DNA of 63,159 nucleotides, counting the filler, from Lenisia limosa (lineage: Eukaryota; Protista; Breviatea): NCBI GenBank assembly GCA_001655205.1. It is 13 parts of 13 records of this genome, joined end to end, with 100 filler letters (N's around TTAATTAATTAA, not from the genome) between each part and the next. Parts side by side here need not be neighbours in the genome. Positions count along the whole stretch, not along the records: positions 50,258 to 53,330 come from LPNZ01001301.1; positions 53,431 to 54,756 come from LPNZ01011388.1; 11 more parts are not named here. The stretch is one strand, 5' to 3'. Shown piece by piece: positions 3,124 to 54,756 of the stretch (positions are counted from its first letter, which is position 1; every line of letters starts with the position of its first letter). The translations under genes were made by a program, and so were the position numbers. The notes beneath the pieces are model-generated. The model made no database searches, was not told the origin of the DNA, and saw nothing but the letters and a program-made list of their open reading frames with translations.

Positions 3124-3223
3124 NNNNNNNNNNNNNNNNNNNNNNNNNNNNNNNNNNNNNNNNNNNNTTAATTAATTAANNNNNNNNNNNNNNNNNNNNN
3201 NNNNNNNNNNNNNNNNNNNNNNN
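3124..3223. other. Artificial scaffold-joining spacer (44 N + TTAATTAATTAA + 44 N); first of 12
   Basis: Identical 100-nt layout also at 24063-24162, 31209-31308, 34056-34155, 38174-38273, 40004-40103, 50158-50257, 53331-53430, 54757-54856, 56245-56344, 59086-59185, 61971-62070. TTAATTAATTAA gives stops in all six frames, a known pseudomolecule linker design. Confidence 0.97.
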
Positions 3224-3299
3224 TATGTCCCTCGAGGAGATCAATGCTGGATGGACAGAGCGCGGACCAGACCAGACTGCAGAAAAGAATCCCTACAGG
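3224..3299 (+). CDS. Isolated probable exon of an unidentified gene at a scaffold start
   Basis: Open reading MSLEEINAGWTERGPDQTAEKNPYR followed by a GT donor (acag|gtacga); no family recognised. Confidence 0.3.
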
Positions 3300-3499: not shown

Positions 3500-5550
3500 T
3501 AAAAATATTAAGCTGAGGGGAAAAATAGCACTTGGGCTTTGAAAAAGCACCCCCAGTGAATCTTTGAACCAAGACATTGGCGCATCAGCCGGCATCAACG
3601 TTTTATGAATGTTAGTCAGATATCTGGTCTTCTCATTTGTTGTAAAATACAGAATTAAGCTTACCAATAATACTCTGAAAATACTGAGGCATATATCAAT
3701 GTATCGCTCAATAAGGCAGCCGGAATTGTTAGGCTCAATGCAACAGTACCTGTGTCACACGTAAGAGAAACGTCAAGGTCAATGTCAAAGTTACTCTTCT
3801 ACAACCCCCACTCCCCCCTGAACCTATTAAAGGCGATGTCAGTAGCACTGCAAGAATCCAGAGGCAGTCACTGAGAACTGTTCCAATCAGAGCATTCAGT
3901 GCCAAAACAAGGGCAACCTCGCAACCTATATGTATGAAGAGCGAAAAAGAAAACTCCCCAATTCAAATTGGCTATATCCACTCACCAGGCCAAACAACTG
4001 TTTCGACTTGAGAGCAGTGCGCAAAGATGACAAAGGGACTGACAATAAGAAGATTGATGACGCCCACAATGCCCAAGAACAGTGGCATGGAGACCTTCTT
4101 GTCCACTCCTACCCTGTACTACAAACAATAATCTTAACACCCGCAACAGTTCAGACGTATCGGGGTAACGGGAAAATGCGAATTCACTCAGCAAACCTCA
4201 AGGATCGTTGCATATGCAGCGTATAGAATTGCACTGAGTAATGCAAGGACATCTCCAGTAACTGTAGAGTTGCCACTATCATTTTTGTCCGAGTTAGCTA
4301 CAAGTGCAGCACCACCCAAGCTGAACAATTAACAGTTTAACCCCATTTCTTCCAAAATGACTGACAGGCAAAAGTAACAATTACCCCCTCTCACGAAAAT
4401 GCAACAGCAAAAAATTTGTTAAGTGTGGCTTTCTCCCTTCCTGAAATTGCCCCTATCACTAACGTCCAAAGGCCTGAGGTTGTACTGGGGAATCATATTC
4501 ATGTTGAAGAAATCATTATCTCTGAGTAATACGAAAAAAAATACAGTATAATACTACAAGAAAGGAACAATAGGAACAAATAGCAACCCCTCACCTGAGA
4601 ACAGTATTGCTTGCAACAGATGTATAAGCCAAGGATATATTGAAGAGGAGGTTTGCAAGGAAGAAGGAAGGCCAAAAGTACAATGCATTCAGCAGGTGCT
4701 ACAAAAATAAGACGTTACTGTAAGGAATGTGTTTATAATACTTTAAAGTTCTTTTTTATAACTTTCTCACAGCAGAGCAAGTTTACCTCTTTCAAAGAAC
4801 TCATTGCGATCTCCTGAAAAGTAAATTCCTTGGTTTAATAATACGGGACAGATAACCGGCAGCAATACATACCTGTGGTTTTTCCTGGCAGGCACCTTGC
4901 TCGACACCTTTCTCAGAATTGAGCAAAAGGGATTGTGTTTCCATATTTTTGTCTCTTCGAATGTAAGTTCAGTTCATAAAGCACCTATCTTGTTTCCAGG
5001 CAATCAGATCATAAGCGCTTTCACCACATACCTCCATAGAGACTGCCATTCTTTGGACCATAAAAACCTCAGTAAGTAGACCGAAAAAAAAGACACGTTG
5101 AAAAATGTCAAGAAGAGTGGCTTGTCAAAATCAGTCTCGACAAGAATGTACCTTAAAATAGGTGAAATAAAAAGAGAAAATTAAATAACTTAATATGAAG
5201 CGCAGATTATCATAACAAGATTGGCAGGTATCTTCCACGAAAGTTGGAGTTTTGTATTTCTGCAATCGAAAGGTTAGTATTATATGTACGAAGGATGTCT
5301 GATTGGCAAACAAAATCAAAACTGACTCAATTTAGGCGATATATATAATATATATTATAATATCATATTATATATACACTATATATAAAAATATAACTAC
5401 ATAATAATTATTCGAAATATAATACTTTAAAGCAATAAATTGCCTTGCCTCTCACTTAATTGCATTGGAAGACCCCACCCAAATGGTAACTACCAAGAGC
5501 AACAGAACAATCCCTATTGAAGTAAAACCAGAAATGTGAATCACAATCTT
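3500..5550 (-). CDS. SLC35F5: SLC35F5/Thi74-like EamA (DMT superfamily) transporter, multi-exon
   Basis: Exons: IGIVLLLLVVTIWVGSSNAIK / YILVETDFDKPLFLTFFN / LYFWPSFFLANLLFNISLAYTSVASNTVLS / TTSGLWTLVIG / GDVLALLSAILYAAY / LFLGIVGVINLL / LNALIGTVLSDCLW / GTVALSLTIP, colinear with SLC35F5. Both ends approximate. Confidence 0.85.
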
Positions 5551-52487: not shown

Positions 52488-53431
52488 TAATATTCTTCAA
52501 CCCAATACATGTTGTTCTTCTCTTTTTGTTTTCATTCAAAGGGTAAAATAATATTAAGAAATTGTATTTTTTTTTTTATGAATGGGTTGAAGAAATTGAT
52601 CAATTTACCGTTGATTCATTGTTTTCCTGCTCTTTCGACATCACTTTGAACGTGAAAGGGTGAACTTTCTGGCAACAGTGTTATTGTACACTTACATATT
52701 GGGGGACTAATATTTGCGCACCTTAACAATTTCCTTGTTTTTGACTGGTTGCAAATTGGTTTCAATTTTAAAGGTATACGCGCCCCCCGTCCCCCCCCCT
52801 TTTTTTTTGCAAGTGTAGAAAAACTTATATATTAAAGAAGAAAAGAGAAACGAAACTATAACAAAAATTCACTGATAATTAGAGAGAGGACTAGATGCGG
52901 AAGATGGAGTTACCAGGGGAGAATGGGTGTCCACAACTAACGCAGTTATTGGGATTGTACATGCTTATACTATGAGATGTTCTGCGTTAATGTATCATCT
53001 TAATAACATAGTATGGTAACGAAGATATCGTGAGGGTTCATCCCAAGTATTTTTCTGAGCTTAATTGAGACTTGTTACAAGAGTAGATAACAAGCCTTGG
53101 CTTTTGCATTTGCCCCCAATACATCTGAAGTTGTACGCATTGCGGAGTTGGTGAGACGGGCAAGTTCCATGGTATTGTCAGGCTATAATATTTTTATCAA
53201 CTAAGACAAATAGGGTTACGTTTATGTAACATACATCAGCTTACCTATTGATATCAAGATCCTTGGAGTCTCATATCCTTCAGTTGTTGCCTGATCAGAG
53301 ACTCGGAGCCCTTTCCAGCAACTTCCTTCANNNNNNNNNNNNNNNNNNNNNNNNNNNNNNNNNNNNNNNNNNNNTTAATTAATTAANNNNNNNNNNNNNN
53401 NNNNNNNNNNNNNNNNNNNNNNNNNNNNNNA

Positions 53432-53566
53432 CCCGCTTGGTATTTGTTTAATGGAGATGAAGTTGATAATAACGTCTCATTTAAATTTGTTGACAATAAT
53501 GGCGCGAAAATTGATATGGGTGAGGAAGAAAGTTATTTGATCGTTCAATTTAGAAGATTAGATTGA
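53432..53566 (+). CDS. C-terminus of a putative Polinton/PLV minor capsid (penton) protein
   Basis: Frame not in the ORF track: PAWYLFNGDEVDNNVSFKFVDNNGAKIDMGEEESYLIVQFRRLD*. Resembles the recalled penton C-terminal pattern (Y...I.I.I.D..G..IDF.GE...I.L). Pattern recall only. Confidence 0.6.
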   Translation, partial: PAWYLFNGDEVDNNVSFKFVDNNGAKIDMGEEESYLIVQFRRLD

Positions 53567-53625
53567 TAGGATTAAATCCAATTATAAAAACTACAAAAAA
53601 ATTATAAAATTATTTTTTCTATAAA

Positions 53626-53811
53626 ATGGTACAAAGAAGTTTAGTGAAGTTTGTAGATATTGTTGAAGAACCTGTCAAAGATCCTGTTAAAGAACCTGTT
53701 AAAGAGATTATAAAAGAATCTGTTAACAAGAAACCAAAATCTAAATATAGACCAAAAGACCAACGTATGAATAAATTGGAAAAATATATTTGGAAAAATT
53801 TATTAGGGTAA
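53626..53811 (+). CDS. Small 61-aa Lys/Glu-rich ORF with PVK(E/D) repeats, copy 1
   Basis: Intact ORF preceded by ctataaaATG; conserved in the second copy at 54127-54312. Confidence 0.65.
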   Translation: MVQRSLVKFVDIVEEPVKDPVKEPVKEIIKESVNKKPKSKYRPKDQRMNKLEKYIWKNLLG

Positions 53812-54126
53812 AAAACGATAAAATTATAAAATTTAAAAAATTATTTTTCTAACACTAAAGTACTATGACAAATTACTCGACTAAAATTTCTGACAATTCA
53901 AAAGACATCTTTGATGCTGATATTCTTTCCCCTCTCTTTGGAGATGTGGTTGGTGGTAAATTAACTTCCCAACCAAATACTANNNNNNNNNNCGACAATA
54001 ATGGTGCGAAAATTGATATGGGTGGGGAAGAAAGTTATTTGATCGTTCAATTTAGAAGATTAGATTGATAGGATTAAACCGATTATAAAAACTACAAAAA
54101 ATTATAAAATTATTTTTTCTATAAAA

Positions 54127-54312
54127 ATGGTACAAAGAAGTTTAGTGAAATTTGTAGATATTGTTGAAGAACCTGTCAAAGGTCCTGTCAAAGATCCTGT
54201 TAAAGAGATTATAAAAGAATCTGTTAACAAGAAACCAAAATCTAAATATAGACCGAAAGATCAACGTATGAATAAATTGGAAAAATATATTTGGAAAAAT
54301 TTATTAGGGTAA
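54127..54312 (+). CDS. Small 61-aa Lys/Glu-rich ORF, copy 2
   Basis: Near-identical to 53626-53811 (PVKGPVKD vs PVKDPVKE). Confidence 0.65.
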   Translation: MVQRSLVKFVDIVEEPVKGPVKDPVKEIIKESVNKKPKSKYRPKDQRMNKLEKYIWKNLLG

Positions 54313-54365
54313 AAAACGATAAAATTATAAAATTTAAAAAATTATTTTTCTAACACTAAAGTACT

Positions 54366-54756
54366 ATGACAAATTACTCGACTAAAATTTCTGACAGTTC
54401 AAAAAACATCTTTGATGCTGATGTTCTTTCCCCTCTCTTTGGAGATGTGGTTGGTGGTAAATTAACTTCCCAACCAAATACTAAACATTATGTTAAAGCA
54501 GTTGGAGACAATAATAACTCTAACCTTATCAATTTTACTACGGGCAAACAAAAATATAGTTTTAACATTCCTGCTAACCGACTTATTAAACCTTCTCACA
54601 TTCGTGTTATGTATCATGTGGAAAATGAAGATGAAAATACTTATACTCAAGAGACTGATGCCACTAAAAAGACTGAGTTTGGAAGTATTCAAATTCGTAA
54701 CTGTAACTCAACAGTTTTTGATTCAGTCAAAATTGGTTATGTAAAGAGTAATGGTA
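54366..54756 (+). CDS. N-terminus of a putative Polinton/PLV major capsid protein (copy 1 fragment at 53865-53982)
   Basis: Intronless ORF open to scaffold end. KYSFNIPANRLIKPSHIRVMYHV resembles the F.IP....L.P....L strand typical of double jelly-roll MCP N-termini and it follows a penton-like gene. Not confirmed by search. Confidence 0.55.

What the first reader, a model, noticed from the sequence alone, without database searches (positions are those of the whole stretch)
53431..54756. Candidate endogenous Polinton-like virus/virophage capsid module
Seen: an AT-rich intronless scaffold with a C-terminal ORF fragment missed by the ORF track, a 61-aa basic/acidic ORF and a long ORF start. Established: Mavericks/Polintons, PLVs and virophages often encode penton and major capsid genes close together and are common, often fragmented, in protist assemblies. 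Inference from motif recall: the order is penton - small protein - MCP. It may be an undescribed lineage.
Basis: partly seen in the sequence, partly recalled or inferred. Interest (0 to 1): 0.8.

Follow-up and report, generated by a model that had tools for sequence, protein, structure and literature searches.

The report
Capsid genes of unknown virophage-like virus
This short AT-rich piece holds two near-identical copies of part of the capsid-gene block (vertex protein end, a small basic protein, start of the main shell protein) of a small DNA virus related in kind to virophages and Polinton-like viruses of microbial eukaryotes, from a lineage with no sequence relatives outside one marine sample, where it had been mis-filed in a bacterial genome bin.

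Summary
The gap is not a continuous join. Its left edge is codon 39 of gene B and its right edge is the last 24 codons of gene A.

Each copy reads: gene A C-terminus, a 61-aa ORF, then the gene B start. Longer contigs from the same sample (ERZ3820729) show the full order: P-loop ATPase, 263-aa gene A, a 54/61-aa ORF, 521/526-aa gene B, two more genes, a protease-like ORF and GIY-YIG genes.

- All genes are intact, with dN/dS about 0.1-0.25.
- A model of gene B's protein is low-confidence (pLDDT 42), yet it hits almost only double-jelly-roll capsid proteins. Mavirus MCP is the top three PDB hits.
- Gene A's best hit, not significant, is the mavirus minor capsid protein.
- There are no Shine-Dalgarno sites, no phage, bacterial or plasmid family hits, and no sequence relatives elsewhere.
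- One contig abuts GC-richer, ORF-poor, eukaryote-like DNA.

The capsid-module reading is largely upheld. "Penton", "endogenous" and any finer class remain unproven. This is a new member of a known kind.

The parts
53432..53566 (+). Copy 1: last 44 codons plus stop of gene A (263 aa in relatives; candidate penton/minor capsid protein), cut by the piece's left edge
   Evidence: It aligns with the C-termini of P0016 and P0008 at 73% identity to P0016. L001's longer 114-aa version is 66% identical to L002's 263-aa protein, E 3e-59. The best fold hit of the P0016 model is the mavirus minor capsid protein, which is not significant.
53567..53625 (+). Copy 1 intergenic spacer with a promoter-like element (A-run, T-run, TCTA at 53618-53621, 8 nt before the ATG)
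   Evidence: The motif T5+N0-5CTA ends within 30 nt upstream of an ATG in 10 of 27 occurrences, against 0.46 expected.
53626..53811 (+). Copy 1 of the 61-aa ORF: acidic, repeat-bearing N-terminal half and conserved basic C-terminal half; function unknown (candidate small virion or core protein)
   Evidence: It is conserved at the same position in L001, L004 (61 aa) and L002 (54 aa), at 52% identity, E 2e-14. dN/dS is below 1. No family hits.
53812..53864 (+). Copy 1 intergenic spacer with a promoter-like element (TCTA at 53848-53851, 17 nt before the ATG); identical in both copies
   Evidence: (53 of 53 bases identical).
53865..53982 (+). Copy 1: first 39 codons of gene B (521-526 aa in relatives; candidate double-jelly-roll major capsid protein), cut by the assembly gap
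   Evidence: 90% identical to the P0014 N-terminus.
53983..53992 (.). Assembly gap (10 N): not a continuous join, since different genes lie on its two sides
53994..54068 (+). Copy 2: last 24 codons plus stop of gene A
   Evidence: Identical to L001.
54069..54126 (+). Copy 2 intergenic spacer with a promoter-like element (TCTA at 54118-54121)
54127..54312 (+). Copy 2 of the 61-aa ORF
   Evidence: The exact product is on ENA contig L001.
54313..54365 (+). Copy 2 intergenic spacer with a promoter-like element (TCTA at 54349-54352)
54366..54756 (+). Copy 2: first 130 codons of gene B (candidate double-jelly-roll major capsid protein), cut by the piece's right edge
   Evidence: 67% identical to P0001 (E 2.5e-47) and 72% to P0014. 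The P0014 model hits mavirus MCP and other DJR MCPs.

Best explanation
The piece is a scaffold of two ~97%-identical copies of one stretch of the virion-morphogenesis gene block of a small dsDNA virus-like element. The element belongs to the double-jelly-roll capsid lineage that includes virophages, Polinton-like viruses and Polintons/Mavericks.

- **Gene B** (521-526 aa when complete) most likely encodes the major capsid protein, whose trimers form the facets of an icosahedral shell.
- **Gene A** (263 aa) most likely encodes the single-jelly-roll vertex (penton) protein.
- **The 61-aa ORF** between them is a conserved small gene, perhaps a minor virion or DNA-associated protein.

In complete relatives a P-loop ATPase, the likely packaging motor, lies immediately upstream. 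A protease-like ORF (probable maturation protease) and GIY-YIG nucleases lie downstream.

Each gene carries its own compact AT-rich promoter-like element, a T-run followed by (T)CTA, 7-17 nt before the ATG. There is no ribosome-binding site. This resembles the late-promoter arrangement that mavirus shares with its giant virus. The resemblance suggests, but does not show, transcription by a giant-virus-type apparatus.

**Shown:** the duplication, the synteny, intact genes under purifying selection, the position-specific motif, and the absence of sequence relatives outside one sample.

**Inferred:** the capsid folds (from low-confidence models), the penton, ATPase and protease roles, the eukaryotic host, integration, and lifestyle.
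For: - **Duplication and gap:**
- **Relatives and synteny:** P0001 on L002; P0014 on L004; L001; L003. Identities are 66% for gene A, 52% for the small ORF and 64-72% for gene B.
- **Genes A and B are different genes:**
- **Intact genes:** 0 internal stops, with dN/dS of 0.12 (ATPase), 0.18 (263 aa), 0.14 (small ORF) and 0.23 (MCP candidate) between L004 and L002.
- **Fold, PDB:** the P0014 model gives mavirus MCP entries 6g45, 6g43 and 6g44 at ranks 1-3 (E 3e-5 to 9e-5, probability 0.99-1.0). They are followed by SGIV, PBCV-1, STIV, vaccinia D13, PR772/PRD1 and EhV. About 45 of the 50 listed hits are double-jelly-roll capsid or scaffold proteins, out of a general library of 350,542 chains.
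- **Fold, BFVD:** hits include asfa-like, NCLDV, tectivirus, adintovirus, Sissi and Qinghai Lake virophage MCPs, and a Tetraselmis viridis virus S1 protein.
- **Secondary structure:** the model has about 16 beta-strands in two blocks.
- **Penton candidate:** the best BFVD hit is the mavirus minor capsid protein. Other minor-capsid and penton proteins appear in the list.
- **ATPase:** Walker A and B motifs are visible in the sequence, and PF01637 scores 34.9 bits against a cut-off of 33.2.
- **GIY-YIG:** PF01541, E 3e-11 and 2e-7.
- **Promoter-like motif:** (family D4; P about 1e-11). The mavirus/CroV TCTA late promoter is described in PMC8547959 and PMC13196603.
- **Not bacterial:** 0 of 19 gene starts have an SD-like tetramer. 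There are no PHROGs, NCBIfam, phage or plasmid hits for the structural genes.
- **Eukaryote-like flank on L002:** GC is 34-46% against 25-31% in the element. The longest ORF in 3.5 kb is 109 aa. The flank carries microsatellites, MITE-like inverted repeats and Cys-rich exon-like ORFs.
Against: - Both AlphaFold models are low-confidence (mean pLDDT 41.9 and 41.2). TM-scores to the hits are only 0.2-0.26, and the fold-search tool warns that low-confidence models can give meaningless matches.
- No sequence method links any of the structural proteins to a known capsid family: Pfam, PHROGs, PDB sequence and profile searches, an exhaustive HMMER search with the N-terminal 130 aa, word searches, and IMG/VR and JGI scans.
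- The penton hit is not significant.
- The protease call is a motif seen by eye, with no tool support.
- No pPolB, integrase, primase-helicase or TIR was seen.
- One related contig is deposited in a MAG labelled Colwellia sp..
- TCTA alone is expected by chance in roughly a quarter of 48-nt AT-rich upstream regions. Only the longer, position-specific motif is significant.
Confidence: 0.72

Rival explanations
1. The element is a tail-less double-jelly-roll phage (tectivirus-, corticovirus- or autolykivirus-like) or prophage of a marine bacterium such as Colwellia. Such phages also carry ATPase, penton and MCP genes.
For: The L004 contig is deposited as part of the MAG "uncultured Colwellia sp. 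SRR2018010_maxbin2_1". Fold hits include PRD1/PR772, Gluconobacter phage GC1, Bacillus phage Wip1 and STIV coat proteins. The GC of the L002 flank (34-46%) is not unlike that of some marine gammaproteobacteria (the comparison is from general knowledge).
Against: - No SD-like sequence lies before any of 19 gene starts, and the upstream G content is 1.6%.
- There are no PHROGs or NCBIfam hits, and no tblastn hits in 50,697 phage records, for the MCP, penton or ATPase candidates.
- The candidate MCP is 521-526 aa. The phage and archaeal DJR targets hit were 323-399 aa, against 503-616 aa for the mavirus, virophage and PLV targets.
- The best-ranked fold hits are mavirus.
- The L002 flank has no ORF longer than 109 aa in 3.5 kb and carries microsatellites and MITE-like repeats, unlike bacterial DNA.
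- Binning by MaxBin2 uses composition and coverage, and it often sweeps in foreign contigs (general knowledge).
Confidence: 0.08
2. The contigs are fragments of a giant virus (Nucleocytoviricota) genome rather than of a small virophage/PLV-type element.
For: The DNA is AT-rich, each gene has a compact promoter-like motif just upstream, and there are many fold hits to NCLDV major capsid proteins.
Against: No Pfam hit at E<=10 to any family for the candidate MCP, the NCLDV capsid family included, and no hit to the poxvirus A32-type ATPase family for the ATPase, although those families are usually easy to detect. The morphogenesis genes are tightly clustered next to eukaryote-like flank DNA within about 9.5 kb. 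Mavirus, not an NCLDV, is the top structural hit. Four diverged variants of the same small block occur in one sample.
Confidence: 0.05
3. The genes are lineage-specific ORFans of unknown, non-capsid function on some mobile element or in AT-rich eukaryotic DNA. The capsid-like fold hits are artefacts of beta-rich, poorly predicted models.
For: pLDDT is about 41-42 and TM 0.2-0.26. No sequence-level similarity to any capsid family was found.
Against: Random beta-rich models would be expected to hit the many beta-sandwich proteins in the PDB. Here nearly all hits at E<1e-3 are DJR capsid proteins aligned over about 500-640 columns. The independent gene context fits the capsid reading: an adjacent P-loop ATPase, a 263-aa neighbour whose best hit is a virophage minor capsid protein, a protease-like ORF and GIY-YIG genes. 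The genes are under purifying selection, and each has a virus-like promoter element.
Confidence: 0.12

Closest known systems
Mavirus and endogenous mavirus-like elements (EMALEs) of Cafeteria (virophages, Maveriviricetes)
   Same: - The ATPase, minor capsid and major capsid genes are co-directional.
- The best structural hits of both capsid candidates are the mavirus proteins.
- A protease-like ORF and GIY-YIG genes lie nearby.
- An AT-rich element sits next to GC-richer flank DNA on L002.
- A TCTA-type motif in AT-rich context lies just upstream of genes. This is the arrangement described for mavirus and CroV late genes (PMC8547959).
   Different: - No sequence-level similarity to any virophage protein was found in any search.
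- A conserved extra small ORF lies between the penton and MCP candidates.
- Only 9 of 23 gene starts carry an exact TCTA; the others carry a variant xCTA.
- No pPolB, rve integrase or TIR is seen on the available contigs.
- Dependence on a giant virus is unknown.
Polinton-like viruses (e.g. Tetraselmis viridis virus S1, Gezel-14T and metagenomic PLVs)
   Same: They are small DJR-capsid elements of protists with an MCP, mCP and ATPase module. They mostly lack pPolB and RVE integrase (PMC11161782). TvV-S1 proteins appear among the fold hits of both candidates: M4QM72 at E 2.4e-5 and M4QZG2 at E 0.07.
   Different: No sequence similarity was found. A protease-like ORF is present here. The replication module is unknown because the contigs are incomplete.
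Polintons/Mavericks and adintoviruses
   Same: The kind of morphogenetic module is the same: DJR MCP, penton, ATPase and Ulp1/adenain-like protease. Adintovirus capsid proteins appear among the BFVD hits. One copy may be integrated.
   Different: Polintons by definition encode pPolB and a retrovirus-like integrase (PMC5499653, abstract). Neither was seen in about 9.5 kb of element on L002 nor on L003/L004. No TIR was detected.
Tectiliviricetes phages (PRD1/PR772-like and relatives)
   Same: They have a DJR MCP, a vertex protein and a packaging ATPase. They appear among the fold hits.
   Different: The candidate MCP here is much larger. There is no SD, there are no PHROGs hits, and the flank is eukaryote-like.

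Membership tests
Double-jelly-roll major capsid proteins (Bamfordvirae type) | Two consecutive eight-stranded jelly rolls in one polypeptide | tested here: met
   The P0014 model (the full-length relative of window gene B) hits DJR MCPs almost exclusively. In the PDB, mavirus is at ranks 1-3 with probability 0.99-1.0, and about 45 of 50 listed hits are DJR proteins. BFVD gives the same picture. The model has about 16 strands in two blocks. Caveat: mean pLDDT is 41.9 and TM 0.2-0.26, so this is met only at the level of Foldseek probability and hit specificity, not of a confident superposition.
Penton (single-jelly-roll minor capsid) proteins of virophages/PLVs | Single jelly-roll fold similar to known penton proteins | tested here: inconclusive
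   The best BFVD hit of the P0016 model is the mavirus minor capsid protein, but with E 2.5e-3, probability 0.63, TM 0.21 and pLDDT 41.2. Its position directly upstream of the MCP candidate and after the ATPase fits.
Virophages (class Maveriviricetes; criteria of PMC9952930) | Virophage-like MCP detectable with the established virophage HMM profiles (score >= 50) | tested here: inconclusive
   The published profiles are not available here. The proxies were negative. The exhaustive phmmer search (N-terminal 130 aa) and the full-length word search found no relatives outside this sample. No named capsid or virophage family matched in Pfam, PHROGs or PDB sequence searches. IMG/VR scans gave nothing. 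Only the fold-level resemblance to mavirus MCP is positive.
Virophages (class Maveriviricetes) | Virophage-like FtsK-HerA packaging ATPase | tested here: inconclusive
   The 281/282-aa protein has Walker A and B motifs. PF01637 is just above its cut-off, and the FtsK_SpoIIIE match covers only the P-loop (E 0.18). No relatives were found by word search or in IMG/VR.
Virophages (class Maveriviricetes) | Virophage-like (adenain/Ulp1-type) cysteine protease | tested here: inconclusive
   A conserved ORF downstream on L002 and L003 has invariant His, Asp, Gln and Cys in the order expected for this protease clan, as seen in the alignment. No Pfam hit at E<=10 and no PDB profile hit. Its start codon is unresolved, because the frame overlaps the preceding gene.
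Virophages (class Maveriviricetes) | dsDNA genome of 15-45 kb; replication dependent on a giant virus | not testable with these tools
   All contigs are incomplete: the longest holds about 9.5 kb of element. Lifestyle cannot be read from sequence. The promoter-like motif is only suggestive.
Polintons/Mavericks | [quoted passage not shown] | tested here: inconclusive
   Neither was found among the proteins of L002, L003 and L004. Neither end of any element is assembled, so absence is not shown.
Polintons/Mavericks | Terminal inverted repeats flanked by target-site duplication | tested here: inconclusive
   No inverted repeat links L002's left boundary region to its repeat-rich right end. The right end is a contig end inside repeats.
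Polinton-like viruses | MCP + mCP + ATPase morphogenetic module, usually without pPolB/RVE, in a 14-40 kb element of a protist | tested here: inconclusive
   The module architecture fits, and TvV-S1 proteins are among the fold hits. No sequence-level link to PLV MCP groups was found, and the host and full length are unknown.
Tectiliviricetes phages | Bacterial host signals (RBS, bacterial flanks) and similarity to phage DJR-virus protein families | tested here: not met
   0 of 19 starts have an SD-like tetramer. There are no PHROGs or NCBIfam hits and no phage tblastn hits. The flank is not bacterial-like.

The most novel reading that the evidence does not exclude
These contigs represent a new, deeply branching lineage (family level or above) of virophage-like elements. 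They would be integrated in the genome of an unidentified marine eukaryote, in several diverged intact copies. Their genes would carry giant-virus-type late promoters. This would be a second, sequence-unrelated example of the mavirus/EMALE type of host-resident virophage, in a different host.
Probability: 0.2. Interest if true: 0.7.

Novelty: new member of a known kind. Interest (0 to 1): 0.45.

Why it matters
- **A gap in profile-based surveys.** Small DJR-capsid elements (virophages, PLVs, Polintons) are central to current ideas on the origin of eukaryotic DNA viruses and on protist defence against giant viruses. Surveys find them mostly with capsid-protein profiles. This lineage's capsid protein has no detectable sequence relative among 1.84 billion representative proteins. 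Current profiles would therefore miss it, and it adds a seed for new ones.
- **Several intact copies in one sample.** At least four diverged, intact, selectively constrained variants coexist in one sample, and one abuts eukaryote-like DNA. That is the pattern expected of a resident element family.
- **A contaminated reference genome.** At least one of these contigs (L004) is deposited in a MAG labelled Colwellia sp. that serves as a species representative in a bacterial reference collection.

Tried and rejected
**Same gene or tandem unit.** I tested whether the C-terminal fragment and the long ORF start are the two ends of one gene on a small circle or tandem unit, as the duplication suggested. 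Rejected: the C-terminus of the full-length relative P0001 does not match the gene A C-terminus, and in L002 and L004 they are two adjacent genes.

**Reading through the gap.** Rejected. The 67-aa ORF at 53865..54068 is an artefact of the nominal 10-N length.

**Sequence-level identification.** All of the following gave nothing for the structural genes:
- Pfam, PHROGs, NCBIfam
- PDB sequence and profile searches
- three word searches, which returned only the family's own variants
- five IMG/VR scans
- two JGI metagenome scans
- phage and plasmid BLAST

**Other checks.**
- tRNA and Rfam: nothing real.
- TIR search on L002: negative.
- Literature search for the run and assembly accessions: nothing.
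- Structure prediction gave only low-confidence models, because just two full-length sequences exist.

In the script I created two unused strings that strung the three in-frame stretches of each copy together. In the script a scratch BLAST subject file held the window piece with its N run removed, so the gap was closed. Neither was printed or used for any result, and nothing was deleted.
Full report
**1. What is in the piece**

The piece 53431-54756 is 28.1% GC. It is not a single stretch of genome. The sequence left of the N gap (53431-53982) and the sequence right of it (53993-54756) are two copies of the same region. Over 493 overlapping columns, 477 are identical, with 13 substitutions and 3 indel columns.

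Each copy has the same layout:
- the C-terminal end of a gene I call A (copy 1: 53432-53566; copy 2: 53994-54068)
- a complete 61-aa ORF (53626-53811; 54127-54312)
- the start of a gene I call B (53865-53982, 39 codons; 54366-54756, 130 codons)

A 130-codon open frame has a chance of about 4e-6 at this composition.

**2. The gap**

The left edge of the gap is codon 39 of gene B. The right edge is about 24 codons from the end of gene A. In copy 2, and in all full-length relatives, gene B continues differently after codon 39.

With the nominal 10 N the two frames are in phase by coincidence. This creates a meaningless 67-aa ORF at 53865..54068.

In longer relatives A lies upstream of B, and B is followed by other genes. 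The scaffold join is therefore either an artefact of linking two near-identical copies or hides many kilobases. Without reads I cannot tell which.

**3. Relatives**

No curated family matches any of the three ORFs: Pfam, PHROGs and PDB sequence searches all gave nothing.

- *L001.* An exact look-up of the 61-aa product of copy 2 found ENA contig ERZ3820729 NODE_7882 (L001, 1105 nt, coverage 54). It is identical to the right copy over all 764 nt. It extends gene A to 114 codons and gene B to 153 codons.
- *L002.* The length-limited word search was blank. I then ran the exhaustive HMMER search with the window's own 130-aa fragment. It returned one real relative among 1.84 billion representatives: P0001, 521 aa, 67% identical. 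P0001 lies on L002, a 13.3-kb contig of the same sample (coverage 59).
- *L004 and L003.* A word search with P0001 added P0014 (526 aa) on L004 (5.0 kb, coverage 113). A cluster look-up led to L003 (2.6 kb, coverage 135). L004's last 37 nt equal L003's first 37 nt.

**4. Synteny and gene content**

L002 and L004 share this order:
- a 391/393-aa gene on the minus strand
- a 282/281-aa P-loop ATPase (PF01637, 34.9 bits against a cut-off of 33.2; Walker A and B motifs visible)
- the 263-aa gene A (66-75% identical to the window fragments)
- a 54/61-aa ORF (52% identical)
- the 521/526-aa gene B (64-72% identical)

P0001's C-terminus does not match gene A. A and B are therefore different genes, not the two ends of one.

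Downstream lie three further genes:
- a 210-aa protein with a hydrophobic C-terminus
- a basic 188/199-aa protein
- an ORF with invariant His, Asp, Gln and Cys in the order typical of adenain/Ulp1-type proteases (alignment)

No tool confirms that protease assignment, and its start is unresolved because it overlaps the preceding gene. L003 then carries two GIY-YIG ORFs (PF01541). L002 also has a 794-aa minus-strand gene with a very weak C1q-like C-terminus.

**5. Are the genes functional?**

None of the compared genes has an internal stop in any variant. Between L004 and L002, dN/dS is 0.12 for the ATPase, 0.18 for the 263-aa gene, 0.14 for the small ORF and 0.23 for the MCP candidate. The variants therefore diverged under purifying selection rather than decaying as pseudogenes. 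The two window copies differ too little to say much: 5 synonymous and 6 non-synonymous changes, pN/pS about 0.3.

**6. Fold evidence**

Only two full-length sequences exist for each protein, so the AlphaFold models are poor: mean pLDDT 41.9 for P0014 and 41.2 for P0016.

The Foldseek results for the P0014 model are nevertheless highly specific.
- *PDB (350,542 chains of all kinds).* Ranks 1-3 are the mavirus major capsid protein (E 2.7e-5 to 8.8e-5, probability 0.99-1.0). Next come the capsid proteins of SGIV, PBCV-1, STIV, PR772/PRD1 and EhV, and vaccinia D13. About 45 of the 50 listed hits are double-jelly-roll proteins, aligned over about 500-640 columns.
- *BFVD.* The list contains asfa-like, NCLDV, tectivirus, adintovirus, Sissi and Qinghai Lake virophage MCPs, and a Tetraselmis viridis virus S1 protein.

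TM-scores are only 0.2-0.26. I take this as good evidence for a DJR capsid protein, not proof.

For the P0016 model nothing is significant. The best hit is the mavirus minor capsid protein (E 2.5e-3, probability 0.63), and other minor-capsid and penton proteins are in the list. Together with its position, this makes "penton" the most likely role but leaves it unproven.

**7. Expression signals**

Almost every gene in every variant is preceded by an A-run, a T-run and (T)CTA(T/A)A, ending 7-17 nt before the ATG.
- The pattern T5+N0-5CTA occurs 27 times on both strands of the element sequences.
- Ten of those end within 30 nt upstream of an annotated ATG, where 0.46 are expected (P about 1e-11).
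- All four gene starts in the window (two per copy) carry an exact TCTA.
- None of 19 starts has an SD-like tetramer, and G makes up 1.6% of the 20 nt upstream.

A TCTA motif flanked by AT-rich sequence is the late promoter of CroV and the promoter of mavirus and type 4 EMALEs (PMC8547959; PMC13196603). The resemblance is suggestive of a virophage-like dependence on a giant virus. TCTA alone is not statistically unusual in such AT-rich DNA, so I give that reading low weight.

**8. Host and the Colwellia label**

The scan of bacterial and archaeal reference genomes found L004 itself. It is deposited as contig 54 of the MAG "uncultured Colwellia sp. SRR2018010_maxbin2_1". This raised the rival of a DJR phage.

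Evidence against that rival:
- There is no SD.
- There are no PHROGs, NCBIfam, phage or plasmid matches.
- The candidate MCP is the size of virophage and PLV MCPs rather than of phage DJR MCPs (target lengths).
- Mavirus is the best structural match.
- The nature of the L002 flank, described next, argues against bacterial DNA.

Bases 1-3500 of L002 are 34-46% GC, against 25-31% for the element. In six frames the flank has no ORF longer than 109 aa. It carries a (GAT)n-like microsatellite, poly-C runs, MITE-like inverted repeats, and short Cys-rich, weakly EGF-like, exon-like ORFs. That looks like eukaryotic nuclear DNA.

The coverages of 54, 59, 113 and 135 are compatible with one or two genomic copies each, but this is weak. 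I conclude that the contig was most likely mis-binned and that the host is an unidentified eukaryote. Integration is plausible (about 0.5), but it rests on one contig that could be chimeric.

**9. Classification**

- *Virophages.* They are defined by HMM-detectable virophage-type MCP, ATPase and protease (PMC9952930). I could not run those profiles, and every proxy sequence search was negative. I do not file this as a virophage.
- *Polintons.* They need pPolB and an rve integrase (PMC5499653). Neither was seen, nor were TIRs, but no element end is assembled.
- *PLVs.* They are the loosest fit: an MCP, mCP and ATPase module, mostly without pPolB or RVE (PMC11161782).

The safest statement is this: a new, sequence-isolated member of the eukaryote-associated DJR-capsid elements, of the kind that comprises virophages, PLVs and Polintons, with mavirus as the closest structural comparator.

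**10. Verdict**

The following need correction or remain open:
- the piece is two scaffolded copies;
- the penton role, the endogenous state and the finer class.

Interest is moderate. New PLV/virophage-type lineages are found often. This one is invisible to sequence profiles, occurs as several intact variants, and contaminates a bacterial reference MAG.

Noticed in passing
L004 (= L005, GenBank CBDLPA010000054.1), whole contig: A contig carrying the ATPase, penton-like gene, small ORF and MCP-like gene is deposited in a MAG labelled "uncultured Colwellia sp." that serves as a species representative in the bacterial reference collection. It has no bacterial features (no SD, no bacterial family hits). 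This looks like bin contamination by eukaryote-associated viral DNA.
   Followed up: partly
L002:1-3500: The GC-richer flank (34-46%) has no ORF over 109 aa. It carries a (GAT)n-like repeat at about 1289-1399, poly-C/G runs, a short sequence recurring in both orientations (about 171-256, 678-719, 943-1033), larger internal repeats (1-56 with 1606-1661; 1075-1112 with 3202-3239), and Cys-rich exon-like ORFs with a weak cEGF hit. It is probably a eukaryotic multi-exon gene region. The organism was not identified.
   Followed up: partly
L002:3258-3402: A near-perfect palindrome (72-nt arms, 92% complementary, 1-nt centre) lies at the composition boundary between the flank and the AT-rich element. 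A 14-nt unit repeated about 4 times follows at 3627-3682. It could be a MITE, an element terminus or a hairpin. Unexplained.
   Followed up: no
L002:12760-13263: The right end of the contig consists of 155-nt (x2) and 78-nt (x3) direct repeats that contain short palindromes, and the contig ends inside them. In variant L003 the same position after the protease-like ORF instead holds two GIY-YIG genes. The variants therefore differ in content there.
   Followed up: partly
L002:3784-6168 (-): A 794-aa protein, rich in N, S and T, has a very weak C1q-like match at its C-terminus (E 0.1) and a weak tail-fibre PHROG hit (E 0.013). It may be a fibre or spike-like attachment protein of the element.
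   Followed up: no
L002:12260-12730 and L003:1205-1717 (+): The protease-like ORF overlaps the 3' end of the preceding basic-protein gene in another frame, and the conserved part has no obvious ATG at its beginning. Its start, or mode of expression, is unresolved in both variants.
   Followed up: partly
window 53865-53981 vs 54366-54482: In the first 39 codons of gene B the two window copies differ by 3 non-synonymous and 0 synonymous changes. The 53-nt spacer just upstream is 100% identical. The numbers are small, but the pattern is odd.
   Followed up: no
L001, L002, L003, L004 (contig headers): The k-mer coverages are 54, 59, 135 and 113, roughly a 1:1:2:2 pattern. This would fit integrated copies in one genome rather than free viruses of arbitrary abundance.
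   Followed up: no
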